Of a stretch of 64,000 nucleotides of DNA, positions 1-64,000 are shown one piece after another (position 1 is the first letter of the stretch; each line of letters opens with the position of its first letter). The position numbers and the translations under genes are program-made. This DNA is from Podarcis bocagei (lineage: Eukaryota), in assembly GCA_964188305.1 (NCBI GenBank), contig OZ076888.1; one strand, 5' to 3'. The notes below the pieces were generated by a model, which was not told where the DNA came from, did no database searches, and saw only the letters and a list, made by a program, of their open reading frames with translations.

Positions 1-680
1 CCTTATTGAAAGCAAATGATACTCAAGTCAACACACATCCAAAACTCCTTCAAACCCACACCCTAAACACATTATCATGATTACACTTCAGCAATTTCAG
101 CATTTTATTTGCATTCATCTGCCTGATTTTGCAAACCGAATCCTGCTGAACCTCATTTCTCAGGACTAATAAAGTAAAGCCCTTTAAAGCAGAAAGGGTT
201 TGGCCCTTTAATATGCAGAAGGTAATTAACAAGATTCCTAAACTGTTCTCGGTTTTAGTCAGCCATTTAATTTCAAATTTGAAGCCAACTACTTTAATGG
301 ATCCATTAATGTTCCTATATTTCAGATTTAAAAATAAATAAATAATACTGTACCAGTTAAAATACTGGAACATGATACAACCTAGGAAGAAGGGTGGGAA
401 GAAAGGGAGCATCAAGAAGCAAATATTTCTGATCCTTAAAGTCAAAATTAAAGGGAAACAAAGAATATTGAATCACAACCTGACTCTAATTTTTACTTGA
501 GATTTTTAACATATGTGAGTGCCCTCAGCTACTATATAGCTTGAATTATTTCAGTGAAAATAGCTAATGAAGTCAGGCATGTGCTAGAATGGCAAAAGCA
601 GTGTTTGATGTAACATAGAATTATATTATGAGACAAATACTGAAATATCACTTCCCCTTTACTCAAATAAAAGACATTAC

Positions 681-7645: not shown

Positions 7646-9434
7646 TAGGAACTGACTAATTTTAAGTTTTCACATTTGTAGAGTGCACCAATTTTGAAGC
7701 AAAAAGACAATTTTTGCACAGAAGTGTTTTGTTGAGTCTGAAATTATGGTCTTGTGATCCAGTTGTTTGAGCAGCAATATTATCAATATGTGGATAGCTC
7801 TACCACTTTTTCACTTTCTAATTCCAGTGTGGAAACACCCTCAGCAGGTTCCAGTCTGATTACAGGACTGGAATGGATGAGGGCTAACAAAGTAAAAAAT
7901 AATCCAGGTTTTTCTTAAATATCATGGTTTGGAAAATCTAGTAATTAGAATGTTTAGATTTGACTCTGGATGGGGTCATACTCTTCTTGAAGAGCTAGTT
8001 ACAAAGTCTCCAAGTGACATTAGGTGCCAGGAATGTTTTCACCAGCTTCAGCTGGTTCAGCAGTTGCAGCCTTAACTAACCTGACCAGCCACAGTGATGC
8101 ATGTACTCCCATTTCACTAAATCTCCCTAAGAGAACCATGTTGCTACTTATTTCCATATCATATCTATGTACTTGGTTATCACTGTCTATATGCTAGTCT
8201 GCATGTTTAATCAAAATATTGAAAAAGATAAAAGGTCAAAAAGTGGCAGCATTCCTTTGGCTACTTTACAGAACATTATAGCAAGTAGGCCCCAATTGGT
8301 TAGGTTACTTAGTTACACTGTACTTCAAATTTGTAACATTTTCACATAAATTTACAGCCTGGGTGTTTGTCCCCTTTACTCAACATGAATACTGTACTGG
8401 TACGCAAACAATAATCTTTTACAAAAATGCCTCCGAGCTCCAGCACCCTCTTCCCAGGAGAAAAGTCTCCTGAATGGTACTTCTGTTGACTCAGAAATTG
8501 AGGTTGAGAAACACAGCCATAATAAAATGTTGGTTTCAATTACAGCCACAGCCTCCCCAATAAAAAAAGATTTTGAGAAGCCACAAAACTCATGAAAAGC
8601 ATATTATTAACCAACTCGCAACACATACTCAAAGCGTATTTGCTTATTGCCTTTGGTTGAGGCAGGTGACCTTTTTTGTGGCAGGGTGGTGATGGTGGCA
8701 GCAGCGGCAATTGTGTCATCTTTTGGCAAGAAAAGTAGCTATTCTCTATAGTGGTTCTGGCTAGTACAGTGAAGAGTTGGGTTGAAACCCCTCAGCTGGG
8801 AAACTCACTTGGTGACCATGGGTCAGTCACCCCCCTCTCAGCCTAACCTACCTAATAGGGGAGTTTGAAGGATAAAAGTGTGGGGCAGGGAGCTGGAAGG
8901 ACCATTTGCGCAGAGGGAAAAGCCTCCTGGAGGAAAGGCTAAGTAGATCAAGGTAATAAACAAGTATACTGTACATGAAGTTCTTTAAGCGAGCACAGTC
9001 AGTCAAGGAGTCACAGCCCAGCCACCCCTTTGCCCCAAAAGGACGTCTGTGACGAGGGGGGTGGTGGGAGAGAGTTGCCCCCCCCCCGCTGAATGCCCTG
9101 GGACAAAGGAGGCGCACCTGTACCAGTGGGGAAGGCAAGGCAAAGGGGGGGCGAAGGAGCTTCAATGTGATGATGTAACCGAAAAATACCTCTCCCCACC
9201 CCACCTCACCCACCACCGTCTCCGCACAGGGAGCGGGGGAAATGAGAGTTGTGGAAACACTCGCCCATCTCTCTCTGTTTCCTCCTCCCCAAGGAAGGAA
9301 GGGAGGGTGGGGAGCAAGGAGCAAGAACTGACAGCGTCGAGGTGTGTGCTGACCTTTCCCTCAGCGAGCGTAGCCATCTCGCCGCTCCCCCAGCCGAAGG
9401 CAAAACCCCAACCCCGGCCGGCCCGCGCTCTCAC

Positions 9435-9560
9435 GCAGCGGCGGCGGCGGGCGAGGAGGAGCAGGGCAACGAGCAACTGTCGCGAGCGAGCGCGCCGTTA
9501 GAAGAAGAAGAAGGCGGCAGGGCGAGGGGGTTGGGAGGGGGAGGGAAAGGGGAATTTAAA
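9435..9560 (-). other. CPEB3: Probable CPEB3 non-coding exon 1 (boundaries uncertain)
   Basis: Donor-like TGC|GTGAGA at 9434 on the minus strand inside the CpG island; an alternative donor AAG|GTCAGC lies at ~9353. Confidence 0.4.
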
Positions 9561-9588
9561 TCCCCCCCTCAGGGCCGGCGAAGAGCGG

Positions 9589-9610
9589 GAACTACATCTC
9601 CCATGGTGCC
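9589..9610 (+). promoter_or_regulatory. ZNF143/THAP11 (SBS) motif
   Basis: gaACTACAtcTCCCAtggTGCc fits the consensus ACTACAnnTCCCAnnATGC and lies between the two predicted start regions. Confidence 0.75.
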
Positions 9611-9977
9611 TTGGGCGCGCTCTGCGGTATCTCAGCTCGGAGTGGGCGAGAAGGGAACCAGGAGCAGCGGCGGTTCCTCTGTGAGGTAAGAGGGCCCCGC
9701 GCGTGCGCAATTGCCCTCGCTCCTCCCCGCCCCCTCGCCCGCTCCGAGGCTGCGGCTCTGTTGTGCCTCTCGCTCTCCTTGCCCCCCCCCTCCTTTACCG
9801 GCCTAGGTCGCCGTCTAGTCAAAGGAGCCCGTCACCGCTCGGAAGGAGAGCCTCCTGCCGCTTCCTCCTCCTCCTCCTCCTCCTCTTCCTTGGCGGCAGG
9901 TTCTAGGCCTTGCTTCTCCCGACCGGCTCCTGGCGCCTGTCGTAGCCGAGCCCCCGGGCTCCCCGCACCCGGAGAGG

Positions 9978-10021
9978 ATGTCGGAGCAGACGGGCTTGCT
10001 GATACCGCAGACCATGGACAG
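9978..10021 (+). CDS. MARCHF5: MARCHF5 coding exon 1 (MSEQTGLLIPQTMDR)
   Basis: ATG at 9978, donor AG|gtacgg; phase 2 joins exon 2 to give DRSCWVC. Confidence 0.9.
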
Positions 10022-43900: not shown

Positions 43901-45153
43901 AATACTGGCTGCAAGCTTTTAAGCGCAGGGAAGTTTGCCTTGGTCAGGCTCAATGTGATGTTGCCCTATTGAGCTGACGTTTAATTGCTGGCATGGCTAA
44001 GCAAATGCTAACCTTCCATTTGTTCTGGGATTTCTTCTTCCCTGTCACTTTAAAATATCTAAGCCTGATAAAGCTTGAAAGCTTGCACCAAGAGCTGCAA
44101 AAACAGTGGTAGGTCAGATTAAGGTATTGTTGTATCACATGCCTTGAAGGGCCACCCTGTTCCGGACATTCAAAGGGTGCATTTATGGAATCAGGCACAC
44201 GCTGTGCTGTGTCTTTGTGACAAAGACTAAGATTTCCATTTTATGCCTTCTCACAGAAGTCTGCCCCATGTCCACAGCTTAAACACCTATTAAGGGTCAC
44301 TGATAGCCTTTTCAACAAGTCACATACCCAACAAGAGAGGGCAAGTTTGATGAGATATCTAAAAACAATACATGAACAACCGGAAGAAAAAGCGCCAAAA
44401 CAATTTTATTTATGCAAATGAAACATTTTCCAAGTAACCCTGAGAAAACACAAGGGTTACAAGCAGAAGGTAACACTCTGGGCAAGAAAAGGGTGGCTAG
44501 CCAGGTGTTTCCAGCATTTTACTAGTCTGAATATTAAAAAAATGTCCTCAAATGTGTATAAAGATTAAAACTATGTCAATATGCCTGGTAACTTATCAGA
44601 AATATATCTGTTGACGTTTCCCCCTCATTTCCACTGATTTATATAGTACCTAAATGGTTGGCTGCTCTGAGGATCAATATGCTTAAGTCTTTTCTTTAAA
44701 AATCAGTATGTGCATTTTAATAATGTTTCGTTCCTCCACATCCAATAAATTGCTTAATCTTAATGACTTTCCATAAGAAAAGGAAGGGCCTTTAAAATAA
44801 CACCAGTTTGTTCAGTAAGCTTCTTCATATTCCATTATGGAAACAAAACCTTTAAAAGGGCCTCACTATTGTAAAATATACCATACCTACACAAACCTTT
44901 GAATATACCACTTGATTTTGGTTTCCAAGAGTGGCTCTACAATAAACATGACGTATGACTACAGCCTATTTGCCTAATTTGCTGTAACCCTATCACACCA
45001 GAAATGCCAAATAAACCTAGAAGGAATCAGGAACCCTCATAATGGACAGGATTGTTTGTCCTAACAACAGCTTAAGATGTTGGTTCATTATGAAAATCCA
45101 CTGAAGTCATACAAGACTCTTCCACTTCCAGTTCTTCACCCAGCAAAGGTTCT
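40930..45153 (-). other. IDE: Probable long IDE 3' UTR with alternative poly(A) signals
   Basis: Almost repeat-free AU-rich 4 kb after the stop; minus-strand AATAAA at 44405-44410, 43741-43746, 43317-43322 and 40950-40955. Confidence 0.5.
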
Positions 45154-45249
45154 TCACAGTTTTGCAGCCATGAAATTGATATGTGGCTTCACCAGAGGAA
45201 AGAGTGGCAGGCTGCGTTTGAACTCTGTCATATTCTGAATCACGTCTGG
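45154..45249 (-). CDS. IDE: IDE last exon (25), ending in PTS1-like AKL*
   Basis: [31 protein letters not shown]; acceptor ttgcag; 96 nt. Confidence 0.97.
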
Positions 45250-45885
45250 CTGCAAAGAAACATTTTAGAAAAAGAAACTTTGAGAATCAAGCACATAGCC
45301 TATATGTATTCACTGAAGCAAAATTCATTTTTAAAATCATCAGCCAAAGGGTGACCAAGTCCTTAAGTTTCAGTTAAAAAGCCAATAGCAAAAAAATTAT
45401 AACTAAGATCCAAACCTTGCTTACATAAGAACTTCCTTCAGATGCAAAATTCACGAGATAAAATTGCCTAAAAAGTGGCTTCTTACAAAACTATATATCC
45501 AATATGTTATGATGACAATCTTAAGACAGGAACATCTCTCTGTGCTTGACAGGTAGGTGTGGTTTCTTCAAATGGCCAAATACAGAAGCCTAATTGGGCC
45601 TAATTAGCTCCATGTTCCAGAAGTGCCACACCCCAAATCTATACTATTCACGACACTCACAATTTTTCTAAAGGCTTGTTCACACAGTGGTTAAGCTGTC
45701 CCAAGCATAGCAGCCAGATAGGTCCCATGAGTAATGCATTTCCTGGTGGTGATATGCACCACCAGCCTCATTTGAACACAGGGATAGTTACTTCTAAACA
45801 TGATAAGGCTGAGTGAGTAATAACAGTGTTGGAGCGTATATTGGGCACTCTCATTTTTTTCATAAATGATTATAAAACATCTTAC

Positions 45886-45953
45886 CTGTGGCAGTGGTGG
45901 AGCTGGTGCCAGGTTTACATCATTCTGAGATGGAAATTCTCCCACAACAGGGC
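45886..45953 (-). CDS. IDE: IDE exon 24
   Basis: CPVVGEFPSQNDVNLAPAPPLPQ; 68 nt; aacag / gtaag boundaries. Confidence 0.95.
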
Positions 45954-46329
45954 CTGTTTAAAGCAACAACAACAGTTCATAAACCTCTAGGAAAACATCT
46001 ACTTTTATACACAGATATTAAACAGACCATTAAAAGCAAAGGGTTGAACTGCTTTTCGTACTGCTTGAAAATCTGCACACTTGCAAACTTTTCTCACATT
46101 TGTTATTCTCCAGGACTCCTGAGAGTGAATATACTCCCACCGATCCACTAGAGGTCATAACCATCCTTTGCAAAAGATTCTGTTTGTTCTACCAAACAGC
46201 TTGGCAGGGGGTTGGACTCGATGGCCCTTGTGGTCTCTTCCAACTCTATGATTCTATGATTCTAAGTGTTTTTCTGTGCAAACTTGAGTGAAGATAATTT
46301 GGAAACAAAGAAAGGCACTCAGTACTTAC

Positions 46330-46402
46330 AGGAATCCATTTCCCGTGCTAGTACATGCACGGATACTTTGTGCCTTCTTTGAGCATCAACTGACAACATC
46401 TC
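46330..46402 (-). CDS. IDE: IDE exon 23
   Basis: EMLSVDAQRRHKVSVHVLAREMDS; 73 nt. Confidence 0.96.
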
Positions 46403-48680
46403 CTACAGAAAGACAGAGGAAAGAAAGATGAGAATCGGTTATTCCAACAAAAGCACAGGAACATCTGCACTGCAGACCAAAGTGTGCAAGAAAGTCTGCT
46501 AGCCTGGAGCAGATATGCCTGACCCAAGCAGGACACTTTATCCAAGTAGGGTGGAATGTCCAAAAAGGAAGAGAAATATGTAGCCTATGCACACTGTGAT
46601 ATGCAGCCAACTGCTGCTGCTTATGCTGTCATATACAATCTCAAGTCACTCTTTTGCAAACATGAAAACACCTGTTCAGTGTTAAACAGAACTGACCTAC
46701 TGGGCCCCTCCCTGGCTGGCTTGTCAATATTTCAGTTATGCCAGTGAGTCCACCCCATTAACTCACCCTGGCTGTTACATAGTGCTTGTGGCCTGCCCAA
46801 GAAAACCTCAAATTCTGCCAAAATCTCTTTCACATACTGTGGAAGGTAAATAAAATTAATGATAAAATAGGTGCACTTACTAGAGATGAGAGCCATTTTT
46901 GAATAATATAGAAACACCAGCAATACTTAAGAGCAATATTAAAATATATGGCAAGAGTAAGCAATTCAAAGTCAATCTAGCTGTCAGTTGCTCAAATCTT
47001 TTAAAAGCTTCATTAACAGAATTAGCTGGGGAGTAAATCAATTGCCTTCCGCAACTGTAATCAAATAATTTAACTACAATGCACTTATATCAATAATTAA
47101 CATTTTCTTAATCGGCCGTAATGACAAGTCTACTGAAAACCATGATGCAATGCACAGTCAAGTTCTATTAGCACTGACTTGAACACAATGAGCATTCATA
47201 ATTAAAAGTAACTAAAGTGGTTCTAGAAAAAGCATCTCCATTCCAAAGTTGCGGGGGGGGGCAGTTAATGGCAAGCTCCTTACACAATTATTTTTTTAAG
47301 AGAGGCTTCAATTCCAAAATATTTTTTAATTTACTTTTTAGATGGCAGGAAGAAGTTTGCCTCACTTCAAAGAAGCTGCCTTATAATCTGTTCAACAGAA
47401 ATTATGCACAGTGTTTCTTTCCCTTTCTTGCATCCCTTCTTGCAGTGTGTGTGTGTACACATGCAAAAGCTGGACAGATGCAGTGATGGGGAATGAATGG
47501 ACTGGGGGTATGGATGGAGGAATATGGTGTGGGGGTGTGTGCATAAGGGGTGGATTGATAGGAGGGAGCATGGCTATCATCTTGGATATCCTCATGACTG
47601 CTCCTGGTGTGGAGACACTGAAAGCACATCTTCTACCTCTTGATTACAGTCTGCAACCATGCATTTTAACTGCACACCGAGCAGCTGTGTTTGACAGACA
47701 GGATAAGGATTCAGAGCTCTCTCCTAATCCACTCTGCTGTTTGAAAACAGGGACCCAAAGGGATGTGCACTGCCCTTATATGCTGCCTCTTTCAGCTGCG
47801 TGTGCATTTGGCTTCCCCCGGTACTTCATGCTCTGCAACCATTGGGGCATGGAAGGAAATACCCTTTTGTATGGTTTCTAGCCTGGGGGAGGGTTCATTA
47901 GTGGGGCTTCTACTGCTGAAGAGTCATGTGCTTCCTTGTCCACCTCCACCTTGTTCTGTTGTACTACTCCCAAAACCAATACTAGCATATATGTAACATG
48001 TATTCTGCTTAGGATATTCAAAGATCCAAAAAGCATGCATGAATTTGTCTGAGTCACTTCAAAACTGTAATGACCACGCCTTTTTAAATAAGCATCAGCT
48101 ATTAAAGGGGGGAAATTAGTTCGTCTGAACTTGAACCAACAGCCCTGGAATATGTTTAACGTATTCATTTTTACCTGCCTTGCAAGCTGCACACATTGCA
48201 CCCTTACTTGTTACTGCCACCTGGTCATACTGCTTTCTTCCACTGGCAGTTTGGAGGGGATAAGCAAAATGTTTTGCAAGTGCGCTGCTGCTTTAGCGCT
48301 GTGCCTTTTGGCATTGTTTAGCTTTCTGTGTTTCTTGCAAGTTGTGGGCATTGTGACTTGATGGTTACACACCTCTCTTAGCATGCACAGATTGCCTCTC
48401 TCTGTGTCCATGTGGCATGTGAGTGTTGTTGCAGTCTTGCCCCTGATTTGGGGAGGTTATTCCAGGGACATTGGGAGCATGACTGCTGTTGATATTGTAA
48501 GAGCGGCCCTATTGGATCAGACCAAAGGCCTAGCTTGTGCAGCATTCTGCTCTCACAATGGCCAAGCCAATGGATATGGGAAGCCCACAAGGAGGACAGG
48601 AAAACAATAACACTATTATCTTTTGTAGTGTTCCTGTTGTATTTTCTCCTCGTCTCTTCCAAGCTGGGCTTGAGTTAGAC

Positions 48681-49183
48681 CAGAGGTTTTCAACCTTTTT
48701 GGGTCCATGGCTCCCTTGACCAACAATATTTTTTCTGTGGTACCCCGTGGGCCTCTTGAGCTCAGCTATGTCATCCCCTGCCTGCAGAGCTAGCAGCCCC
48801 TCACCCCTTTTCAAACACCCTCCCTTGTGGAGTGTTCCCTCAGCCTCCTCTCTTTTCCTCGCTCCTTGGGAATCCTCTGGGTAGCTGCCGCCCCTGGTCT
48901 CTGAGCTGCCCCCCCCAAAAAGAGTTGCCTCCTTCCACTGCCCCACAGGGGCCTGGGAAGCACCCCCTGGCGAGCCCCAGAGACACCATTCACCTGGGGA
49001 GCTCGTAGCCAGGGCTGCTGCAACGAACAGTTGTGCAAGCCTTTGGGAGGCAGAGATGCAAGAGGGTATCAGAGGTGGAAGGGAAGGAAAGAAGGAGAGA
49101 CAGAGGCCAGTGTTGTCCATGGCACCCGTGACCATCATTCAAGCCACCCCAGGGTGCCACGGCCCACTGGTTGAGAACCACCA
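48681..49183. mobile_element. hAT-type non-autonomous transposon
   Basis: Ends cagaggttttcaacc / ggttgagaaccacca; 8-bp TSD agttagac / agttggac. Confidence 0.8.
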
Positions 49184-49377
49184 AGTTGGACTATAGGACT
49201 CCTCTGCTATGTACTTGTATTGCAATAAGCAGCTGCTCAATAAGGCAATATTATTAATTTTGCAAAATCACCAATTACTGTTATACATACAGAGCTGATT
49301 GCAAGGTTCAAACAACCCTATAACTCCTTAAATACAGCATACAAACAGTTCAGGTGCTATACGTAACAATGACAATA

Positions 49378-50260
49378 CAGTGGTGCCTCGCAAGACGAAA
49401 TTAATTCGTTCCGCAAGTTTTTTCTTCTTGCGAGTTTTTCGTCTTGCGATGCACGGTTTCCCATAGGAATGCATTGAAAATCAATTAATGCGTTCCTATG
49501 GAAACCGCCTTCAGACCAGGTCCGGGGACAGTCTGTCCCCCGACCTCTTCTGAAGACTGGGGGGGGGGACAAGGGCTTTTCTTCCCACCCCCAGCATTTT
49601 AAAAAACCCCGGGACAGCGGAGGACTTCTCCGCTGTCCTGGGTGATCTTAAAATGCTGGCGGGTGGCATTTTAAAATCGCCCGGGACAGCGGAGGACTTC
49701 TCCGCTGTCCCGGGAGATGTAAAAGCCCCTGGGAAGGCAGGCAGGGGGGACAAAGACTTTTGCCCCCCGCCCGCCTTCAGAAGAGGTCCTGGACCTCTTC
49801 TGAAGGCGGGCGGGGGGCGAAAGTCTTTGCTCCCCACCGCCTGCCTTCCAAAGCCGTCCGGGACAGCGGAGAAACGTGCTGCCTTTCTCCGCTCTCCCAG
49901 GAAGGCAGGCAGGGGGGAGCAAAGACTTTCGCCCCCCGCCCTGCCTTCAAAAGCCGTCCGCGATAGCGGGAAGCGCTTCCCTGCTATCCCGGACTGCTTT
50001 TAAAATGCTGGCGGTGGGGAGCAAAGCCTTTCGGCCCCCGCCGGCCTTCCTGGACCTCTTCTGAAGGCCGGAGGGGGGGAAAGGCTTTGCTCCCCACCAC
50101 CAGCATTTAAAAGAGGTCCCCGGAGATTTCCCTATGGGCTTTCTTCTTGCGAAGCAAGCCCATAGGGAAATTCGTATTGCGAAGCGCCTCCAAAACAGAA
50201 AACCCTTTCGTCTTGTGGGTTTTCCATCTTGCGAGGCATTCGTCTTGCGAGGTACCACTG
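49378..50260. mobile_element. 883-bp Tigger/pogo-like non-autonomous transposon with GC-rich palindromic interior
   Basis: TIRs CAGTGGTGCCTCGCAAGACGAA / TTCGTCTTGCGAGGTACCACTG, TA on both flanks, CpGs largely intact. Confidence 0.92.
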
Positions 50261-50798
50261 TAGTAGCTGCAGAGATGTCCCCAAGGACAACGTGTGCTTT
50301 GTAGAATCTGGCTAAAGAACAACAACAAAAATAGTTGTTCTTCCCCACCCCCATCTACTTTAAAAAGCTTTTAGAATATAGTGTCACAATTTTAACCCAA
50401 CCAGATATATATAATTGTTCCTGTAAAGAGCTTTGGCTTGTCCAGGCAAAAAAGAAGAGAAAAACTATCATTTACATGTTTGAATTATGCTGACAGTATG
50501 CACAGAATTAAGTTAGCAAGCATTCTGATGAGTGACTAGGGAATAATTGGGGAACAACATTTTTACCCTGGTAAAAAGAATGTGGAATAAAATAAAAAAA
50601 AGAAGAATACTCACAGGCTCTATTGTCATGTTCATAGCACACAGCAACATTTTAACATCTGGTATATGTATGTACTCCATTTAGATAAATGTTGTGATGT
50701 TTATCAAGTTCTCAAACTGTTATTAATATATTCCCTTAAATTTTACACAATTTTACAATCAGAAGCTAAACTAATCAGAAATATTATGATCAGCTTAC

Positions 50799-50860
50799 CT
50801 TATAAAAGTGCATAATATCATCCTTAGTAAGAGTTTTGAGATATGCCACTTCAATGTTAT
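50799..50860 (-). CDS. IDE: IDE exon 22
   Basis: DNIEVAYLKTLTKDDIMHFYK; 62 nt. Confidence 0.96.
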
Positions 50861-51515
50861 CTGGACAACAAAGATTATAATTAATACAATTATGAAATTT
50901 ACACTTCCTTCAAACCACAACACCTCAGCATATTGTAATTATTATTATTATTTATTGAATTTATGTACCGCCCTATACCCAAAATATGCCTGTCACTGAA
51001 AATATTGCTACCCTGAAGGATCAGGACATTTTCTGAAGCCTGTGCACATGTGACATTCCATGTCCTTAGCTATGATTAATGGATCAGGAGTATCTGCATC
51101 AAGCATCATATGTTCTTAGACTGATGCAAAGGAAGGGATAAGGCAGCACTGGAATTTCTAGAATGCAAATCCCTCATCACATAATCGGTTATAAGAATAC
51201 ATGCCAGGCAGCTTTCAAAAATGGAATGTGGTCTAGATGGGGCAAAGAAATAGATAATACCACAGAAATAGCTAATAATAATTTAATTTTAAAAAATTAT
51301 TATTTGTACCCCACCCATCTGACCAGGTCACCCCGGCTATGTGCAGTATCCCAGCATTGTGACTTTGACACTAATTAATCTTCTAAGTGTATTCCAGAAC
51401 TAAATATTATTATTTTATCATGCATGGTGGGTACACTTTAGATGGTCTGAATTGTTACTTTTGTTAAGCTTTCATCCAAAAAAAATTACATTTCCAGCTT
51501 GGGAGTGCTTCTTAC

Positions 51516-51788
51516 CTCTGTCAAAGTTATATTGCTGGGAAATAATTTCGCCCCAATATTTTGCACACTCAGCAGACAGTTTCTTTGGTTTGTCAAGGCG
51601 ACGAATTGCTAAAGCCTGGATGTGCTTCTGGAAGGCTTCATCAGACATGTCCTCTATACTCTTCTCCATGGTTTTTAAAAAAGCTTCAACTCTGCTCTCC
51701 AAGTAGTGTGGAGGTTTTTCTGACTGGATGATAAATCGTAGTCCTTGGATACCATTTGCCCGCCGTGGACCACTGAACACAATGTAAC
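51516..51788 (-). CDS. IDE: IDE exon 21
   Basis: [38 protein letters not shown]...[14 protein letters not shown]; 273 nt; acceptor tttcaag. Confidence 0.98.
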
Positions 51789-52264
51789 CTTGAAAAAAAC
51801 CAAATAATTCATTCTATTAGACTCACTAAATAAATAATTAAAAAAGACAGAAGGGGTTTGTATTTCTGCCCTTGAATTCTGGCCAAATTCTAACATGACC
51901 ATTAGTGCCTTAAATGGTCTTACATCAAGTGAATAGATGATATAACTATCGTAACTAATCTCAGGTTTTAGCTTTCGTGCAAGCTAATGGAGGGATCTCA
52001 CATTATGCATTTTGACCATGAAGAAAACAGCATATATATTAAAATTGTATAAATCACTTTCATGATTCTCCTGTATCTCTTTGAAACAGTGATTTCATTG
52101 ATTTGTCACTGAGCACAAAGGGCCCCAAGCCAGCAATAAGATTCCACAGCCATCACATGGACAGCACATTACATTGAACTATAGTGGCTGAAGTATACAA
52201 TCCAAATTCTGCTCACTATAACAATATTTAGGTGATCTATGAAGACAGGCAAGCTATTATTTAC

Positions 52265-52432
52265 CTAACTGTTCTTTAGTGCGCAGGGTATTGAAGCAAG
52301 GCTCTGAGATGATTTGACAGAAGAGCTCCAAAAACATATTCTCTGAGGTGCTTTGCATATCTGTTTGATAATATATTTCAATGCCACAATTGTTATGAAC
52401 CTCGTTCCTCTGTTGATAGACGAACCAACCTC
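52265..52432 (-). CDS. IDE: IDE exon 20
   Basis: [56 protein letters not shown]; 168 nt. Confidence 0.98.
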
Positions 52433-52586
52433 CTAAAAAAACATGAAAATGATGCAAAGGGTCATTTTGAAAGATGGTCAAGCAGGGAACCATCCATACT
52501 CTCTATGCGATGTACACTAGTTTAGAGAAGAAAATATAAGTACTCTATATAAACACAATCTGGAAGCCTAGGACTGAAATGAATTA

Positions 52587-52844
52587 CCATACTTTTTGCT
52601 CTATAAGACTCACTTTTGCCCTCCTAAAAGTAAGGGGAAGTGTATGTGCGTCTTATGGAGTGAATGCAGGCTGCGCAGCTATCCCAGAAGCCAGAACAGC
52701 AAGAGGGATTGCTGCTTTCACTGCGCAGCAATCCCTCTTGCTGTTCTGGCTTCTGAGATTCAGAATATTTTTTTTCTTGTTTTCCTCCTCCAAAAACTAG
52801 GTGCGTCTTGTCGTCTGGTGCATCTTATAGAACGAAAAATGCGG
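52587..52844. mobile_element. Tc1/mariner-type MITE
   Basis: Imperfect TIRs ccatactttttgctctataaga / tcttatagaacgaaaaatgcgg flanked by TA. Confidence 0.8.
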
Positions 52845-53394
52845 TACTTTTTCTAGTCATGGTTTCTTTGTTCCATGAGCAAAGAACTTCAGCTTATATT
52901 ATAATCAGGTGCATAATTACCCCAAACAATGCCAGTGAGTGGTTTGGTAAACAGTAGTTCTCGTTTCCAAATTAGCAACTAGCCCCAAAATGGTGCATGA
53001 TCTGCCCATGATGCACCTCTACACATTGCTATCCATTTTTCTACTCTGCAGTGCTTAACTCTTTGTACGCTGTGAATAAATTCAGGATATATATTTGAAA
53101 GTCAAATACTGAGACTTGAGTGATTTCATTTGTATAGTAATTCTGCACTCTATTCAGTGAGGAAGACCTTTTCCTCCAAAACTAACACAGAGATTCACAA
53201 CACAGACCTAGACTACTGTTGCCAAAATAATATATCATTTTGGCATTGATTTTGAAATATTTGCCATGCAGTACTGAAAGCAAGTCACTTTCCAAAAACA
53301 AATCAAGAAATTTCATCCTGACTTATTGCAAATGCAAGAACCATGAACCTCAGCTTTATATGTTTTATAGCTTATGTCCCAATGGACAACTTAC

Positions 53395-53506
53395 TGTCAG
53401 GCAGCTGTACTTCTCTATACCTTACAAGCTGGCTCGGAAGCAGAGGTTTTGTATGAGCATGCTCAATGAGAGTGTCTTCAATCATTTGCATAATTCCTAA
53501 TGCAGC
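53395..53506 (-). CDS. IDE: IDE exon 19
   Basis: [37 protein letters not shown]; 112 nt. Confidence 0.98.
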
Positions 53507-55880
53507 CTGGAAGAGAAGAAATTCATTGGAGATTTTATTCATCTCCTGGCAATTGTCCATGTGGTAGCACACAGAAGGATAACGGGTATTACGGAAAATG
53601 GCGAAATTAGAAAGGAGATGACTAATTGCAGCAGATGCAAGCATTAGGAATGCAAAGCCAAGTTGGTACGTGTGACAGCTATGAAGCACACAAAACTGAA
53701 AGGCTGAATCTTTGCTTCTACATTATGTTTTAAATACTTTTAGAAAACAAGATCAACTTTTTTTAAAAAATAAATAAATGCACATTTTATATGCAATGGC
53801 TGTGCCCTACATCTTAGCACATAAGGCTGAATTGTTTTTTCCTCCCTGCCACCCCTCTTCATTTACAGAAAATATGTGTCAACTCATTGCTACTTTGATG
53901 TCCACAGCCAGCATCTGCTGTATCATCCCCATATTACTCTTGTCTCCTACTCTTCTGCATTTAGTTTCTGAAAGTTTAGTGAAACCACACAATTCCTTAG
54001 TTCCCCCTTCATTTCCTACTTTATGCATTGATTAAGGTCCAAGTCCATGGTCCTCTTAAGCCTGTAACTATGAGAGACGTGTATGCATCATGGGGCTAAA
54101 ACAATACAGCTGCACAAACAGCAAAAATGCCTTTGACAAGCCAATGCTATAAAACCCTTTGACCATCTCCAGAGAGGAGTCTTACTTTCTGGAGTTGATA
54201 TCAAAATCACTATGCATTAAAGTACCAAATAAAACCTTACGATAATGAGTAACAAATCTACAAAAAAAAAAAACCCAAGTCACTCTAGGGAAAGCCTTTA
54301 TAGAGGAAACAAACTCATCAAGATGTATTGAAATTAAATCCAAAATAATAAAGGCTGTTAAAAGCTAACTGTGCTTATAGAGATGCAAAACTCCAAAGCC
54401 TTTTTTAAAGATACAGTCATATTCAGATATGCAACTTCAAAATGAAAACTACAAGGCTGGGTCAACTGATCTGAACTCAAGAAAATCTCATTTAAAATGT
54501 GCTTTAAAATTCAAATTCAGTAAGCCAAAACCTTTTGGATTCTAACATCACAGAAAGTAACCTTGCATAGAAAAGACAACATTTAAAAATGCTAAACCAG
54601 GGTGTGGCTTGATTAAATAAATAATGTCAAGGAAAGCCACTTCCTCTTCCATGAAACCAAATATCCAGGTATGGTAGATGTCATTGTTCACTGCGTAGTT
54701 CACTATCTGGGGAGACTCAAATAGTTTTTACTAGTCCTTAATGGCTCATGCGGGAGGACTTTGAGACCTTGCCCTTTTGGTTTGCCTTAAGTCAAATTAT
54801 TTTACCATTACTATGGCATTAAGGGTTATTTTAAGATGCTCAGAAATAAGTGAGCTGGACATGCTCATTCACTGTTGCCTTTTAACATAAAATATGTACA
54901 GTTTCTACAGATAGAGAACCTTAAAGTTTTTTCTACAAACATGGCTGTTGGTACCTTCCTTGTACTTATTATATCCAACCAATATACGCAATACAGAGCT
55001 GTCACACCTAGCGCAAATATGTAAGACCCTAGTCTCATTTTACAGGTAGGTATGAAAGCAAACTAGCTCTATAATTTCATCAAAAGTACCATTAACATCG
55101 CTGCATTAAATTCCTTTGCTAAGATGATATTCAAACATCTCACAAAGCTGTACCAGGCAATCTTATACTATAACATTAAAGTCACAATGTCTATTATTTC
55201 CAGCTCACAGACTGCCATTTAACATTAGCCACTGACTTCATTCTCAGCTATTTTAAATACATGCTCTTGGTTCAAATTATATGCCTGTTTGAGAACTTAA
55301 GTGTGTGGATCTAGCATTCAATTTTACAGCCTTATTTCATCACTGAAGCAGACTGCGCAGATACCATGAAGTATAAACTGCCTGAAAGCTCATTCCAATA
55401 CATGTTGGAATGCAAGTCCCTTGAACATTCAAGTAGTTTTGCTTGATTTTAAGAAATCACTTAACAGGGTCAGTTATTTATCTGGGACAAAAAGGAAGCA
55501 TCACACAGCCAAACAGTTCAATCTTGAATGTGAAATGTAAGCTTAAAGAGACATCACAGATATGATTGTGCACCTGTACTGTCCCCAAGATATGTAATAA
55601 GAAACAGAAACCTAAGTCTGGGATGCAGCATTGTGAAGATTTCATTTCAAATAGATGTCATAGCCTTTCTGTGTTATTTTATACTCTTCTCTCTAGCTAA
55701 AGACACCCACAGAACAATATTGGACAAGCAAACCTGTAAGATAGACTCACTGACAGAAAAGCTTATGAAGATTTAAAAAGCAAGCATGGATCAAAAGATA
55801 GAGAAACTTAAGTAAACCCTTGATTTTACGTACAATTATCAGTATAAATCTGCTTCTGGTGAAAAACGTATCAAACCAAC

Positions 55881-55972
55881 CTGTTTTGTTATATTGCCAT
55901 GGAGAAGTGCTTCAATGTGTAACCGTGACAACAGCTGAGAAATAAAGGCCTTGAGACGGGGAAGGGTGACAT
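55881..55972 (-). CDS. IDE: IDE exon 18
   Basis: [31 protein letters not shown]; 92 nt. Confidence 0.97.
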
Positions 55973-57556
55973 CTACAACAGATATTTAGAGGTTTAAAAT
56001 CAATCACATTTTCCATTTCGAAAAACAAGGCCTATATCATCCTAAAATCCAATACATGTCTTAGAAGATGACAAAGAAAATTATAATAATCAACAAAAGT
56101 CAGTGGGAGTTTTCTTCACAAATATTCAGGTTTGGGAAAGTTTCCAGGACAAAATTGCAGTGCTCACTGCGTAGTTTGCCTTGCTTAGAATTCACATGTT
56201 ATTTGACCCAGATTCCAACACAGAAAAGAAAAGAGAAAGGCAGACAGACAGACTATGCTGCACTGCAGTTAGGCTAAACAGACATCCAGCCTCAAAAATA
56301 GTAACAGTCATTCAGGTGGTGGCTGAAGATAAAGCTTAAGCTGTTAACTACATAAAAGAACATGTAGTTTATCATTCCCCATCATCTTGACAGCAATTAT
56401 TTCTGAATGGCAGTTTCAGAGATTGGTGGTTATTCTGAAATTAATTAAACTTTTCATAGATATGTATGGTAGGATTAATGCCTTTAGCTACAGGCACATC
56501 CAAACACCCACTGAAACACAGGTGAGTGTAGATGAATATAAATGGTGAATACAAGTTTAAGTGCCACCAGAGTGGATTGTGGCAATCAACCTTAGAAACT
56601 AAACAATCAGCATAACCTAGATTTCACACCTCGACTCCCTTGTAGAAGTGTACAAAGGGAAAGATGGGAAACTTACATAGGGGTCAGGGGGTGAGGAGAG
56701 AATATTGGAAAGAAATTTCTTCCTCCTGCCTGTCTACAGCCAGGCATACGGATCACTAGTAAATAGATGCTGTGTAAATAAGATCTCTGATATCACTGAT
56801 GGTAAGATAGAGAACATAGGAATGCTGTATTTGGGGTTGTTCTTGAGGCTGCAGCTACCGCAGAATGATTATGCTGGCTGTTACACAGGGAGGCAAGAAG
56901 CGATCATATTGCAACAAATTCTGCACTAACTGATGGTTATGGGATCCAAGTATTTAAAGGAGCACCTCCCCTGATAACTCCCAGCCCAGTCTATGTGGAG
57001 GAAGTCCTGCTTGGGTGCTGCTGGAGGGCGAGGCCCGTGGGGTGGTGAAGTGGAGCAAGGTCTTCTTAATGAGATTAAGAAGACTGAGATTATATTGTCC
57101 GGATGGTGCTGATGTTTCAGTGTCACTTAAAGACAGTGCTGCATCCAATGAAGTTGCCCCATTGCTGCAAGGACAACAGAGGGGGGACAGCAGAGGAGGG
57201 CTCTTGTCTTCATGTCCTGCTTGGGAGCATCTGCAATGGCATATAGATGGCCACTGCTGCAAACAGAATGCTAAACTAGAAGGATGTTTGATTTAATCCA
57301 TTTAGTCTACAACTGGCCCAGAAAATGGGAATGGGGACTAGGTTGGATTGGATAGTGATTTCCCCTTTGCTTCATTCTCTGCTGCTGTCATTAGAATCAC
57401 TCATGAGTTTGTGTTGGCCCAGTTCATTTGTCTGATAACAGACATGGGCTTCTAAGTGGAGCAGCGTGAGCCCTGAGTGAGCTATGTGGCTGCAAACTGG
57501 AGTGAGTGAATTAAATATCTGCTGCTTTCTTCCCAAGACCTATATCCTGCCCTGCC

Positions 57557-58580
57557 CCATGCAATGTTCCTGAACAAAGTGGAGCAAATTGTACGAGTTT
57601 GGCTGAGAGTATAAAACAAATATTACTGTGCTTCCCTTTGTCTTGAAAGAGACTGAGTGTTTACACAGTTCACAGACTTAAAATGACGGAGGTTGAGCTT
57701 GCCAACCTGGAAAAGCACCAACTATGCTTAGTGATCAGATGAGTGGCAGTGCCTGTACCTTTCTCCAATGTTCTGATTTTCCCTAGACCCAAAGAAAATT
57801 GATGAGCTAGAACAGCTGAATCTCTGGACTTTTAAAAGGTAAAGGGAAACAGGACTTGAGAGTGGAAGAAAGGAATGGCATTCAGCATGCTGGGGTTCTG
57901 AAAAGTATTTGGAAATCTCATCTGAAAACAGGAATATTCAATGTACTGACCTCTAGGTGTTTTGCACTACAATTCACATCATTCCTGAACACTGACTATA
58001 TTGGCTGGGGCTAATGGGAGTTAAGAGTCAAACACGGGGGGGGGGGGCACAATATTGGCAACCCCTCTCCATGCAATGTTCCTGAACAAAGTGGAGCAAA
58101 TTGTACGAGTTTGGCTGAGAGTATAAAACAAATATTACTGTGCTTCCCTTTGTCTTGAAAGAGACTGAGTGTTTACACAGTTCACAGACTTAAAATGACG
58201 GAGGTTGAGCTTGCCAACCTGGAAAAGCACCAACTATGCTTAGTGATCAGATGAGTGGCAGTGCCTGTACCTTTCTCCAATGTTCTGATTTTCCCTAGAC
58301 CCAAAGAAAATTGATGAGCTAGAACAGCTGAATCTCTGGACTTTTAAAAGGTAAAGGGAAACAGGACTTGAGAGTGGAAGAAAGGAATGGCATTCAGCAT
58401 GCTGGGGTTCTGAAAAGTATTTGGAAATCTCATCTGAAAACAGGAATATTCAATGTACTGACCTCTAGGTGTTTTGCACTACAATTCACATCATTCCTGA
58501 ACACTGACTATATTGGCTGGGGCTAATGGGAGTTAAGAGTCAAACACGGGGGGGGGGGGCACAATATTGGCAACCCCTCT
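57557..58580. repeat. Perfect 512-bp tandem duplication in IDE intron 17
   Basis: 57557-58068 is repeated at 58069-58580; no difference found by eye, including a G12 run. Confidence 0.95.
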
Positions 58581-59374
58581 CCTAAGACTATCAAACAGAA
58601 TTTTAGAACTGCACAACTGCAACTGTAAAAAATAAGAGGCAAATTATATATCCATGGGTCATACTGCATAACCACTTCTTCCACAGGAATATGGAATTAA
58701 TTTCTTAAAGTGTTTTTATGCTGTCCAGATCCCAGAATTTAAAAGGCACCCTTTAAGGACAGATTGTTGGAACTAAATGAAGCCCCAGTTAGGGGGATTA
58801 AGCTCTTGAAATCTGTCTGCACCAAAACTGTGGGACTTTTCTGTGAGGGACTTCAAACTTCACATCTGAGCATACTTTTGGAAGCTTACGATCTTCTTGG
58901 ATTGACGAGTTATTGCTGGTGGATAATTTTAAACTAGATATATTTTAGAGAAAGATATTTTGATGATTATGTTAAGCTTCTTCACAATGGACTTATTTTA
59001 AATGCTTAAAGCTTTGTTATTTTAATATTCCCTCTGTAACAAATGTGGTTTTGGTTATCATTAAGGATTATTTAAATTCTAAATTTAGATCTTAAAAACC
59101 TAGAACATGACAATAAGGTTTTAAAAGGTTTTCTCATCACCACTAAGTCAATCTAAATTACTAAAAATCTCCATACCCTCCATAGAACAGTTGTATGAAT
59201 GCATATACTATTTAAGACGGAGATGAAATTAAAATACTTCGCTCAAAGTTCAGTTGAGATAAAAAATGCTTGACTAAGAAACAACAATTTAAAAATCAAA
59301 ACAAGTAAAAATACACATTAGATAGAAAAGATGTAATTAAAATGGGCAAAATATATAAACTGGCAGCAGCTCAC

Positions 59375-59495
59375 CGTCTAAAGCTTCTTTTAATTCATCT
59401 TTGGTCCAGGCAACTTCCGTCATCAGTAGTCGGAGGTAATACATGGCATGCTGGTGTGGTTGTTCAGCTCGGAAGTTATTAAGCGATCGCATGTA
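59375..59495 (-). CDS. IDE: IDE exon 17
   Basis: [40 protein letters not shown]; 121 nt. Confidence 0.98.
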
Positions 59496-60054
59496 CTAAC
59501 AAGGTTAAAATAAAATAATGGTTAAGAAATGAAGATTTGCAATGAACGTTGCCTGGTTTTTTGATGTTCTATATTCAAATTATATGGTCAGATAAAAGAA
59601 ATAAATGCCCTTCAAGATGGGCAGGGCTCCCTCTTAACTGAGATCTCATATCATAGTTTGAAGCTGGATGGCAAATCATTATTCATCCATGATTAAAAGG
59701 TTACCCTGACTAGCATTCATCAACCAATACTGGGGCCAATAAAACACATCAGGAATTTGCCTGTAATTGATGAGCTTATGGATGACTACTCTGAAGTCAC
59801 ATTATTTTCAAATGGAGCTTACTCTCAGGCAAGTGTGCAAATGACAACAGTCCAAGTGTGGCACCAATCATTGCAGTCTTATACCTTTCTGCAGGCATAT
59901 GTACATTCCCTACACATTGTTCATAACTTGTTTGAACTTTTAGGCTCTGTACACCCCCTCCTGCCTTCAAGGAACGAAATATTGCATGTATGGTGTCTTC
60001 CCCTGCTTGATATTCTGATTTATAAGGATCAAAGTCAAGTTCAAGATGGCTTAC

Positions 60055-60165
60055 CGCCTCCTTGATAATTTCAAATCTTTTTTCATCAATCTCAAAGGTA
60101 GCCATTTTCTCAACAATCTTCTTGAGCAGGATATGCTGCTTGTCATTGTAACCTTTTACGGAAAG
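60055..60165 (-). CDS. IDE: IDE exon 16
   Basis: [37 protein letters not shown]; 111 nt. Confidence 0.98.
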
Positions 60166-62069
60166 CTATAGGAAAAGGATATATAAGCTGTTATGTGTTT
60201 GAAATATTCTGTTTTCTATAATTCTAGATTGTCCATCAAAGCAGTAAACAGCAACTTCTTAACACTGGAAACCATTCTCCCTTATTTCACCAGAAATACT
60301 AAGGTTTGCCCTTTACTACATGGAAGTCTATGTGTGATATTATTACTGCGTTACTTTTTCCCAGGGCTTAACATCTTCTATTACAATTACAAAGCAAAAT
60401 TATAGTGGAAAACAAATATTGTTCCATGCTGCAAAGCAATGCTTCAAACGTCAGGTAATAGAAAACGGAATGAAATGTTGTTGCTCTTTCCCAGGATTAA
60501 AATCAGAAAAGCAATATGCTAATTGGAATGAAAAGAGTAGTTTATCATTCTTTTTCCAAATGAAGAATAAAAGTATCCTAGGAACCCAAATCTAGAAAAG
60601 AATATAGGAAAGAAAAACTTCTGTTCCATAGTTAATAAAGCAGAAGAGTCCATTATATACTGATTTTTAAGAAGTAGGGACTTTCAAATGTTTAAGACAT
60701 CAAGATGACAGGTTCATAAAATCATTGCATAACTCGGTTGACCACCATACACACAAGGCTGTATTGAACGCAGTGCCAACTGGGTGCTGCTTGTGCAATG
60801 TGACTTCAGTTTCCTCTCCCTTTCCTGCCCCCCCCCCAACATGCTAAACAGGCTTCTCCACCCTTCTGGAGCTTACTCTGAAGGTGTATAGGGAGCTAGA
60901 GGGGACAGGAGAAGAAGAAAAAAGAGGATTTGCAGGTACTGATGACTAGCAGCATCTGCAAAGCTCCTTGCGCATATAAAGGATAAAACCTTTGTTTTAG
61001 CAACACCTTGCTGCCTGCAAGATGCACCGACTCACCTGTCATTTGTGATGTCTGGTATGTGGGAGACTCTGCCAACCTTGCAAACTAAGCCTCTGGGGCA
61101 GATCCTAATAAGGATCTGGCCTATGAAGTCAAAAGGGCTCCCCAACCCCTGTGCTACATGATGAAAGAAATTAGAATGGACTTGACTCATATTGACTAGA
61201 TCCCAGGTTGCAGTCTGAAAACATAACACCTTGGCAACCTTGCTGGTGCTAAATAGGTCTGATCATATGAGAGGCTGCTGAACAACACTTTGTACACCAC
61301 ACTGAGTTCCATGATGGAAAAAAATGGCAAGCTACAAATGTAAACAAGCAAAAATACTATAAAACTGTGCTGTTTTCCCCCAGCCAATTTTAGCACTGAA
61401 ACCAGTACATTAAAAAGCATGCTTTTTAGCAGCCCCATGTTTTGTCAGATAAAGAAAATGTATGACCTACGCAGAGATTACTGGAGTCTTAAAAGTAAGT
61501 GCAATGTTTTGGGAAAGTTTAGGGAAGAAATAGTCATGTACTAGAGATCACTTTTTAATGTACTCATTTGTTATATAAGGACCCTGTTTCACAAGTCATC
61601 TTGATCCTGAAATGCAGTCTTCTCATACCAATATGCAGTTAGTAATATTTAGTAAATTGCATGTCTGATGAAGGTGGTTCTGGCACACAAAAGCTCATGC
61701 TGCAATAAATGTATTAGTCTTCAAGATGCCCTGCAGTACTTTGGTGGTGGCTGGGGTTTTTTATTTTTTAAGTATACATTAGGATCTAAATAACTGAAAG
61801 CCAGCAGAACTCCATGTTTAACTAAAAACATAGCAACTCCTTCAAGGTTACTAGACTATACAAATGAGTAAGAAATGCAGATCAGTAATGCATCAGCACA
61901 CTTCTCAGTCATAAAAAAACCATTCCAATCATGGCCAAACCATTCAATAAATGGTTATAAAACTGCACAAGTCTCATGCCCTTATGATAGGGATGCAAAG
62001 GAGGACAAAACCAGTAGCCATTTTTTCAAGCAGCACTCAACTCTCACGCCATCTAATTTTTGCTTGTTC

Positions 62070-62233
62070 NNNNNNNNNNNNNNNNNNNNNNNNNNNNNNN
62101 NNNNNNNNNNNNNNNNNNNNNNNNNNNNNNNNNNNNNNNNNNNNNNNNNNNNNNNNNNNNNNNNNNNNNNNNNNNNNNNNNNNNNNNNNNNNNNNNNNNN
62201 NNNNNNNNNNNNNNNNNNNNNNNNNNNNNNNNN
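62070..62233. other. N gap, 164 nt
   Basis: Run of N. Confidence 1.
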
Positions 62234-62234
62234 A
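62090..62234 (-). CDS. IDE: Inferred alternative IDE exon 15b (only its first base is visible; the rest is in the N gap)
   Basis: Strong polypyrimidine tract and acceptor cttttgttttgtttttcttttttgttag|T abut the gap. T would complete the split Ser codon AG|T. The gap fits 145 nt. Confidence 0.6.
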
Positions 62235-62697
62235 CTAACAAAAAAGAAAAACAAAACAAAAGGATGCTTTGATACTTCAAGGAGCGACACGGTAATGGAT
62301 GAAGAAACATGACTGAAGAGTATGTATATGCAGCCTCATAACTAATATTCTCGGGAATGAAACACTGGGAATTTGATTTCTCATTCGGAACTCTAGTGGA
62401 ATGGAGCAGTATCTCAACTCCAATTCGGACTGTAAATTTGAGTTTTAAGTAAAAAAAAAAAATCTTGCAAATATTCTGGTGAATGACATAAAATGAAGTG
62501 CAAAAATTGCTGAATGCGAATGGAAATGTTGAAGACTCCAGAAATTTCAAATTATGAGAAAGTATAGGTAGAAATCAAGGTTGAAAAAGAAACTGAAAAA
62601 AACAGGTTCTCAATTGGAAAAGCCATTGAAAAATTGCTTCCAGCAAATCATTTTTTTCCTTCTGATTAGTGGAAGTAAATTTAAGGCTTTTAAGATT

Positions 62698-62845
62698 NNN
62701 NNNNNNNNNNNNNNNNNNNNNNNNNNNNNNNNNNNNNNNNNNNNNNNNNNNNNNNNNNNNNNNNNNNNNNNNNNNNNNNNNNNNNNNNNNNNNNNNNNNN
62801 NNNNNNNNNNNNNNNNNNNNNNNNNNNNNNNNNNNNNNNNNNNNN
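62698..62845. other. N gap, 148 nt
   Basis: Run of N. Confidence 1.
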
Positions 62846-62862
62846 CCACGTAAGCAAATGGG
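62718..62862 (-). CDS. IDE: IDE exon 15(a); first 17 nt visible, remainder in the N gap
   Basis: cattttcttccag|C CCA TTT GCT TAC GTG G = (S)PFAYV(D), the start of canonical exon 15. The end is inferred from the 145-nt orthologous exon length. Confidence 0.9.
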
Positions 62863-63051
62863 CTGGAAGAAAATGTTGAAAGTAAAATATCTGCTGCAAT
62901 TACTTCCCAGTTCTGCTAGATCCTCCATACTGGATCTCAAGGACACAGTAAAAAAGAAAATCCTGCTTCCTGTTATGAGAATATTAAGACAGTATGTGAA
63001 CACAAACACACAGCTAAAGGGGGAAAGATTGATTAAACAATTCCACACTGA

Positions 63052-63053
<2 letters not shown>

Positions 63054-63086
<33 letters not shown>
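63054..63086. repeat. (CA)n microsatellite
   Basis: Directly visible. Confidence 0.97.
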
Positions 63087-63088
<2 letters not shown>

Positions 63089-63994
63089 ATTACATCTATG
63101 TTAAATCTACTGCGTAAGATTACACAAAACCGTTTTTAGCTCACATTATTCTGAATTTGCTACAAAGACAAATGCTTACAAACAAGTACAAAACATATGT
63201 AAAACACTTAAAATATACAATGAGTTAAAAACCGCCACAGTGGATAAATCTAAAAGCTTGCCAAGTAGGACAGTCTCACACTTAACTTGCTTGTCATCAG
63301 GATTAAACCTCACTGAACACAGCTGCTGGTTTCACAAAATCAGGAAATAGCGCAGTTATAGGTTTGCTACCAAACCACTGGCATTTTCTATATTAGGCAC
63401 AAAAATATCAAAGTTTTGTATTTAGCTATAGCACATAACACTACCCTGATATATTTTTGCAATATCCCAAGGAGGAAGAGTACGCTGCACAGACTTCCAA
63501 AGGTAAAGACAACTCAAAGACTCAAGTCATGTTTCAACAATACTGCTTCGCACCAACATATTAAGAGTGACAAGCCAGATTAAGAGCAGAAGTAATTTGT
63601 GCACAGTATGGTCTAATATCTATTATGGATATATACATATAGCAGTTAAAAATATGAAATCATCAACATCGCCCAAGTAAATTGTTCACAAAGCAACATT
63701 TCTTACTGAAGAATTCTATCATAAGTAAAATAAAAAGTACAACAATATTCAGCATGTTAAAGCAAAATAATAATTATGGGGCAGAATAATGATTCAAAGA
63801 ACAAAACATTTAATTAAAACCATGCATCTCTTTTTGAAGAAAAATCAGAATGTTCTTTTAATAATGTGAAACAAGTGACCCTTTGCACGATGATTTCTGA
63901 CATGCAAACCAACACTATTTATTCAGAAGTTAAGTTTCACTGGGCTCAATCAGACTTGCTCCCAGAAATGTATGCGGCCTCAATATATGTTAAA

Positions 63995-64000
63995 ACTCAC
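63995..64000 (-). other. Possible 5' splice site (GTGAGT) of IDE exon 14, which would start just beyond the window edge
   Basis: The window ends actcac = GTGAGT on the minus strand, and exon 14 was not found within the window. Confidence 0.4.

What the first reader, a model, noticed from the sequence alone, without database searches (positions are those of the whole stretch)
62070..62864. Two N-gaps appear to hide a tandem pair of mutually exclusive IDE exons (15a/15b)
Seen: the acceptor at 62863 is followed by (S)PFAYV and then gap 2. A second strong acceptor at 62235 is followed by T and then gap 1. The two exon starts are 628 nt apart and so are the left edges of the gaps, so a 145-nt exon ends exactly 20 nt before the end of each gap. 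Known: human IDE has an alternative exon 15b that replaces 15a and gives a less active enzyme. Inference: the duplicated-exon cassette is conserved in squamates. Because 145 is not a multiple of 3, including both or neither exon frameshifts. Annotation of this assembly would miss both exons.
Basis: partly seen in the sequence, partly recalled or inferred. Interest (0 to 1): 0.7.

Follow-up and report, generated by a model that had tools for sequence, protein, structure and literature searches.

The report
Hidden IDE exon 15a/15b pair
Two blanked-out stretches in this lizard's insulin-degrading-enzyme gene sit where humans have the known either/or exons 15a and 15b, so this is very probably the ordinary lizard counterpart, though the hidden letters could not be read.

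Summary
The gene is IDE, on the minus strand. The window has only two N runs, 62070-62233 and 62698-62845. Each starts just after a good acceptor: 17 nt into exon 15a (PFAYV readable) and 1 nt after a very strong acceptor at 62236-62235. Each ends exactly 165 nt after its acceptor.

A published human table gives 15a and 15b as 145 nt each, phase 2-0, with starts 632 nt apart. Here the starts are 628 nt apart and the readable phases agree. The readable intron holds no other 145-nt open candidate.

Both N lengths are 4 mod 8, which points to computed masks of exact length and not to estimated gaps. Other readers noted N runs on conserved exons elsewhere in this genome.

The reading is therefore well supported, but only indirectly. 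An open 15b, its donor and its use in RNA remain unshown.

This is the counterpart of a known human and mouse exon pair, so novelty is low. The claim that annotation would miss both exons cannot be judged; it probably applies only to the masked copy.

The parts
62863..62890 (-). Acceptor of exon 15a: pyrimidine-rich tract and AG at 62864-62863
   Evidence...ttcaacattttcttccag|CCCATT, 16 of 20 pyrimidines, AG-free zone 28 nt.
62846..62862 (-). Readable first 17 nt of exon 15a: third base of a Ser codon, then PFAYV and one more base
   Evidence: PFAYV is the start of the human 15a peptide as printed in the supplement of PMC5740500. The phase is 2-0.
62698..62845 (.). N run 2 (148 nt): would hide exon 15a bases 18-145 and the first 20 nt of the next intron
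Evidence: The length is 4 mod 8.
62718..62862 (-). Inferred full extent of exon 15a (145 nt)
   Evidence: Inference from the 145-nt human exon and the phase-0 start of exon 16. The donor is hidden.
62235..62717 (-). Inferred intron between 15a and 15b (483 nt; 62237-62697 readable)
   Evidence: The human counterpart is 487 nt by the coordinates. It holds no 145-nt open AG..GT candidate.
62235..62264 (-). Candidate acceptor of exon 15b: long T-rich tract and AG at 62236-62235
   Evidence: 17 of 20 pyrimidines (16 T), T at -3, AG-free zone 32 nt. Only 13 of 4284 minus-strand AGs in the window are as good.
62090..62234 (-). Inferred exon 15b (145 nt); only its first base (T, 62234) is readable
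   Evidence: Inference from geometry and human coordinates. Its content was not tested.
62070..62233 (.). N run 1 (164 nt): would hide exon 15b bases 2-145 and the first 20 nt of the next intron
   Evidence: The length is 4 mod 8. The letters were not read.
60055..60165 (-). Exon 16 (111 nt, 37 codons, phase 0 at both ends), the common downstream partner
   Evidence: acceptor ...ttcctatag|CTT TCC GTA AAA, donor GCG|gtaagc.
59375..59495 (-). Exon 17, used to fix gene identity and residue numbering
   Evidence: 40 of 40 residues identical to human IDE 666-705 in the 1019-residue chains, E about 5e-23. Peptidase_M16_M, profile positions 247-283. One search shows the splice sites.

Best explanation
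This is the lizard counterpart of the known IDE exon 15a/15b cassette, two tandem-duplicated exons of 145 nt that are used one at a time. The pre-mRNA is read from the minus strand. Exon 14 lies beyond the window's right end. It is joined either to 15a (62862-62718) or to 15b (62234-62090), and that exon is joined to exon 16 (60165-60055). By counting back from exon 17, either exon supplies residues 581-628 of the middle M16 domain. Because 145 is 1 mod 3, including both or neither shifts the frame of exon 16 onward. Such transcripts would meet an early stop and be removed, so only one-exon forms make protein. Shown here: gene identity, the 15a acceptor and its first 17 nt, the phase-0 start of exon 16, a very strong acceptor at 62236-62235, and a layout that matches the human one. 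Inferred: everything inside the N runs (length, open frame, donors, likeness of the two exons), use in RNA, and the lower activity of the 15b form, which is known only from human enzyme.
For: Gene identity: exon 17 is 40/40 identical to human IDE 666-705. Other exons hit the Peptidase_M16_M, Peptidase_M16_C and PqqF-like_C_4 families. Searches show the 15a start with PFAYV after one base and exon 16 starting in phase 0, which fits an exon of length 1 mod 3. (supplement of Hatje et al. 2017, PMC5740500) gives human 15a at chr10:94239034-94239178 and 15b at 94238402-94238546. Both are 145 nt and phase 2-0, with starts 632 nt apart and a 487-nt intron. Here the figures are 628 and 483. Placing the lower N run at random in the 2552-nt intron would match that offset within 4 nt about 0.35% of the time. 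One search shows the 62235 acceptor is among the 13 best of 4284 AG sites. Both acceptor-to-N-edge spans are 165 nt. One search finds no readable 145-nt open phase 2-0 candidate in the intron, and both N lengths are 4 mod 8. Searches show that 15a/15b splicing is known in human and mouse.
Against: No letter of the proposed 15b beyond its first T is readable. Its open frame, donor and likeness to 15a are untested. The 628-versus-632 match assumes that the 148-nt N run has the right length. The 100 nt flanking the two units show no likeness to each other; that is expected for an old duplication but adds no support. Exon 14 lies outside the window, so the shared upstream donor and the split Ser codon cannot be checked.
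Confidence: 0.8

Rival explanations
1. The lower N run hides a conserved element that is not a working exon 15b in this lizard. It could be a decayed relic of the duplicate, a poison exon, or an intronic regulatory element. In that case only 15a is used.
For: Nothing inside the run was read, and no RNA evidence was obtained. In mouse liver the 15b form is about 1000-fold rarer than 15a, so weak or lost use in some lineages is conceivable.
Against: The run begins 1 nt after one of the best acceptors in the window. It ends in register with the 15a run (165 nt each). It sits at the human 15b offset within 4 nt.
Confidence: 0.12
2. The two N runs are ordinary assembly gaps of estimated length that fall here by chance. 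The lower one hides plain intron or a repeat.
For: The scan's program labels them as assembly gaps with estimated length.
Against: They are the only two N runs in 64 kb and both begin within 17 nt after an acceptor. The spans are equal at 165 nt. Both lengths are 4 mod 8, which has 1/64 odds by chance. Unchecked notes on other parts of this genome report the same length pattern and N runs lying on conserved exons. The resulting spacing matches the human one.
Confidence: 0.04
3. A 15b-like exon exists but differs in length from 145 nt or uses another acceptor inside the N run. The exact register with 15a would then be a by-product of how the mask was drawn.
For: Mask lengths come in steps of 8, so mask edges need not follow biological edges. 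Only one base after the 62235 acceptor is readable.
Against: The human exons are both 145 nt with the same phase. The frame from the exon-14 side to exon 16 requires a length of 1 mod 3.
Confidence: 0.04

Closest known systems
Human IDE exons 15a/15b (Farris et al. 2005, as cited in PMC7830943; coordinates in the supplement of Hatje et al. 2017, PMC5740500)
   Same: It is the same gene and the same place in the gene: the exon begins with PFAYV after a split Ser codon. The phase is the same (2-0). A second acceptor lies 628 nt downstream of the first, against 632 nt in human. The layout allows two exons of 145 nt.
   Different: In the lizard window the exon bodies and donors are hidden. Likeness of the two exons, the open frame, expression and the lower activity of the 15b form are all untested.
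Mouse Ide 15a/15b (PMC8467815)
   Same: It is the orthologous exon pair, detected by isoform-specific PCR, which shows the cassette outside humans.
   Different: The mouse has direct transcript evidence, with 15a about 1000-fold above 15b in liver. None was obtained here.
Frame-incompatible mutually exclusive exon clusters in general (Hatje et al. [quoted passage not shown]
   Same: These are tandem exons of equal length that is not a multiple of 3, so joint inclusion or joint skipping breaks the frame. The 483-nt intron is long enough to be spliced, so steric hindrance is not needed to explain exclusivity.
   Different: Whether an RNA-structure switch also acts here is unknown. A 26-nt intronic element at 62311-62336, flagged in another note, could not be tested.

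Membership tests
IDE exon 15a/15b mutually exclusive pair | The host gene is the IDE orthologue | tested here: met
   Exon 17 is 40/40 identical to human IDE 666-705. Other exons match M16-family domains. IDE-like peptides run in order along the minus strand.
IDE exon 15a/15b mutually exclusive pair | Exon 15a is at the expected place and phase (start phase 2, beginning PFAYV) | tested here: met
   (62862 onward) compared with the human entry. Only the first 17 nt are readable.
IDE exon 15a/15b mutually exclusive pair | A second exon of the same length (145 nt) and phase lies in the intron before exon 16 | tested here: inconclusive
   The acceptor and the geometry fit, and no readable alternative exists. 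The exon body lies in the N run and was not read.
IDE exon 15a/15b mutually exclusive pair | Spacing of the two exons is as in human (starts 632 nt apart) | tested here: met
   628 nt here against 632 nt from the coordinates. This assumes the 148-nt N run has the right length.
IDE exon 15a/15b mutually exclusive pair | Sequence likeness of the two exons (tandem duplication) | not testable with these tools
   The readable flanks show no likeness.
IDE exon 15a/15b mutually exclusive pair | GT donors after both exons | not testable with these tools
   Both donors would lie 20 nt inside the low ends of the N runs.
IDE exon 15a/15b mutually exclusive pair | Transcripts carry one or the other exon, never both | not tested
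One search listed RNA runs only for a related species.
Assembly gap (unread letters, estimated length) | Placement is unrelated to gene features and length is arbitrary | tested here: not met
   Both runs start just after acceptors and end in register. Both lengths are 4 mod 8.

The most novel reading that the evidence does not exclude
Both alternative exons, each with about 20 nt of its downstream intron, are near-identical to human DNA over 148 and 164 nt. That is why only these two of the IDE exons in the window were masked. The intron between them is also held at 483 against 487 nt, across what from general knowledge is some 300 million years. That would point to constraint on the RNA itself, for example a structure-based switch using the intronic element at 62311-62336, and not just on the protein.
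Probability: 0.3. Interest if true: 0.45.

Novelty: already known. Interest (0 to 1): 0.2.

Why it matters
If the hidden letters confirm it, the IDE 15a/15b switch dates back at least to the common ancestor of mammals and lizards, with almost unchanged spacing. That would argue that the low-activity 15b form has a conserved job and is not mammalian splicing noise. It would also give a non-mammalian model for studying that job. On the practical side, N runs in this copy of the genome tend to sit on the most conserved exons. Readers should therefore not treat them as random gaps, and exon models built on this copy will lose just those exons.

Tried and rejected
**Read laying.** I laid reads and contigs across both N runs (window:59300-63040, two runs of the window's species, one DNA run of a relative, one RNA run of a relative). 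The aim was to test continuity, exact length and junctions.

- One search was a local tandem-repeat scan of 45000-64000 that spans them. It returned nothing.

**Literature.**
- I looked for the age of the IDE exon duplication in papers on tandem exon duplication. IDE is absent from what is held.
- I looked for IDE in papers on ultraconserved elements. Nothing was found.
- A search on contamination masking gave nothing useful.

**Local checks.**
- Likeness between the flanks of the two units was not significant.
- Repeats or inverted repeats around the N runs were only A-rich chance matches.

**Considered and not run.**
- The big representative-protein search and the word search. Gene identity was not open, and an exon-sized query cannot reach full-length IDE isoforms.

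**Rejected reading.**
- Ordinary assembly gaps, for the reasons given under the rivals.

Full report
**What is in the sequence**

The window holds only two N runs, 62070-62233 (164 nt) and 62698-62845 (148 nt). The gene around them runs on the minus strand.

An AG at 62864-62863 follows a pyrimidine-rich tract. From 62862 it is followed by one base and the codons for PFAYV, then N. A second AG at 62236-62235 follows a long T-rich tract. It is followed by a single T at 62234, then N.

The two exon starts are 628 nt apart, and so are the low edges of the two runs. Each acceptor-to-low-edge span is therefore exactly 165 nt.

**Which gene it is**

Open stretches on the minus strand read as successive IDE exons from 60165 down to about 45100.

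- Exon 17 (59495-59375) is 40/40 identical to human insulin-degrading enzyme residues 666-705, with E about 5e-23. It also matches the end of Pfam Peptidase_M16_M.
- Other exons match Peptidase_M16_C and PqqF-like_C_4.
- Exon 16 is 60165-60055: 37 codons, phase 0 at both ends, with a good acceptor and a gtaagc donor.

Counting back, exon 16 covers residues 629-665. A 145-nt exon 15 would then cover 581-628 plus the last base of codon 580. Exon 14 is not in the window: nothing IDE-like lies between 62865 and 64000.

**Comparison with what is published**

Reviews and a mouse study state that human and mouse IDE use exon 15a or 15b, and that the 15b enzyme is less efficient (citing Farris et al. 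2005).

The supplement of Hatje et al. 2017 (PMC5740500) lists the two human exons on GRCh37:

| Feature | Human | This window |
|---|---|---|
| Exon 15a | chr10:94239034-94239178, 145 nt, phase 2-0 | 62862-62718 (inferred end) |
| Exon 15b | chr10:94238402-94238546, 145 nt, phase 2-0 | 62234-62090 (inferred) |
| Start-to-start distance | 632 nt | 628 nt |
| Intron between them | 487 nt | 483 nt |

The readable phases also agree: one base before the first full codon of 15a, and a phase-0 start of exon 16. A random position of the lower N run in the 2552-nt intron would match the human offset within 4 nt about 0.35% of the time.

I used only coordinates, lengths and phases from that table. I did not use its human peptides to fill or search anything.

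**Strength of the second acceptor**

- The site at 62235 has 17 of 20 pyrimidines (16 T), T at -3 and a 32-nt AG-free zone.
- Only 13 of 4284 minus-strand AGs in the window do as well.
- It scores above the proven acceptors of 15a and 16 on the same count.
- The readable part of the intron holds no 145-nt open AG..GT candidate in phase 2-0. None of the 40 other open candidates looks IDE-like.

**Gaps or masks**

The program's note asks whether the flanks are continuous and in frame. Direct proof is therefore missing.

The indirect evidence favours computed masks of exact length:

- Both lengths are 4 mod 8. An unchecked note reported the same for nine N blocks elsewhere in this genome.
- Both runs sit on exons and end in register.
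- The spacing that results from the 148-nt length matches the human spacing.
- Several unchecked notes report N runs on conserved exons or elements elsewhere in this genome.

If the runs are masks, 'annotation of this assembly would miss both exons' applies only to the masked copy.

**How it most likely works**

Exon 14 is joined to 15a or to 15b, and then to exon 16. Since 145 is 1 mod 3, including both or neither shifts the frame, so only single-exon transcripts encode full IDE. This is the frame-shift class of mutually exclusive exons in Hatje et al.. The 483-nt intron is long enough to be spliced, so steric hindrance is not the cause.

These steps are inferred. Only the acceptors, the phases and the layout are shown.

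- I did not read or infer the hidden letters.
- I did not search with the human 15b peptide printed in the paper.
- I built no joined spliced model.
One search was a local repeat scan that spans them and returned nothing.
- The organism is coded. 'Wall lizard' comes only from other agents' notes.

**Verdict**

This is the counterpart of a known exon pair, so novelty and interest are low.

Noticed in passing
window 62311-62336: The scan holds a separate note (s1-337825) calling this 26-nt intronic stretch between the two candidate exons an antisense copy of exon-15 coding sequence and a possible RNA-duplex splicing switch. In one search the minus-strand frame here reads ...YEAAYTYSS. Pairing could not be tested because the exon bodies are hidden.
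   Followed up: partly
window 57550-58361: There is a tandem duplication inside the IDE intron after exon 17: two copies of at least 300 nt, 99% identical, with starts 512 nt apart (the same peptides appear twice). It is recent and of unknown content.
   Followed up: partly
window 666-1616, minus strand: This is a 317-codon open stretch with a glutamine-rich start (MQDDLLMDKSK...). From memory it looks like the first coding exon of CPEB3. A GC-rich island at about 8000-10000 may be the MARCHF5 promoter. That would give the same gene order as at the human IDE locus. It was not tested with tools.
   Followed up: no
window 49500-50350: This is a GC-rich stretch (0.51) whose minus-strand frames repeat motifs such as PPPAFRRGPG. 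It looks like a minisatellite between IDE exons. TRF at score 150 did not report it.
   Followed up: partly
They are not masked with N in the window, so the N masks and this filter do not use the same rule.
   Followed up: no
window 63055-63087: A (CA)n microsatellite lies in the intron upstream of exon 15a.
   Followed up: no
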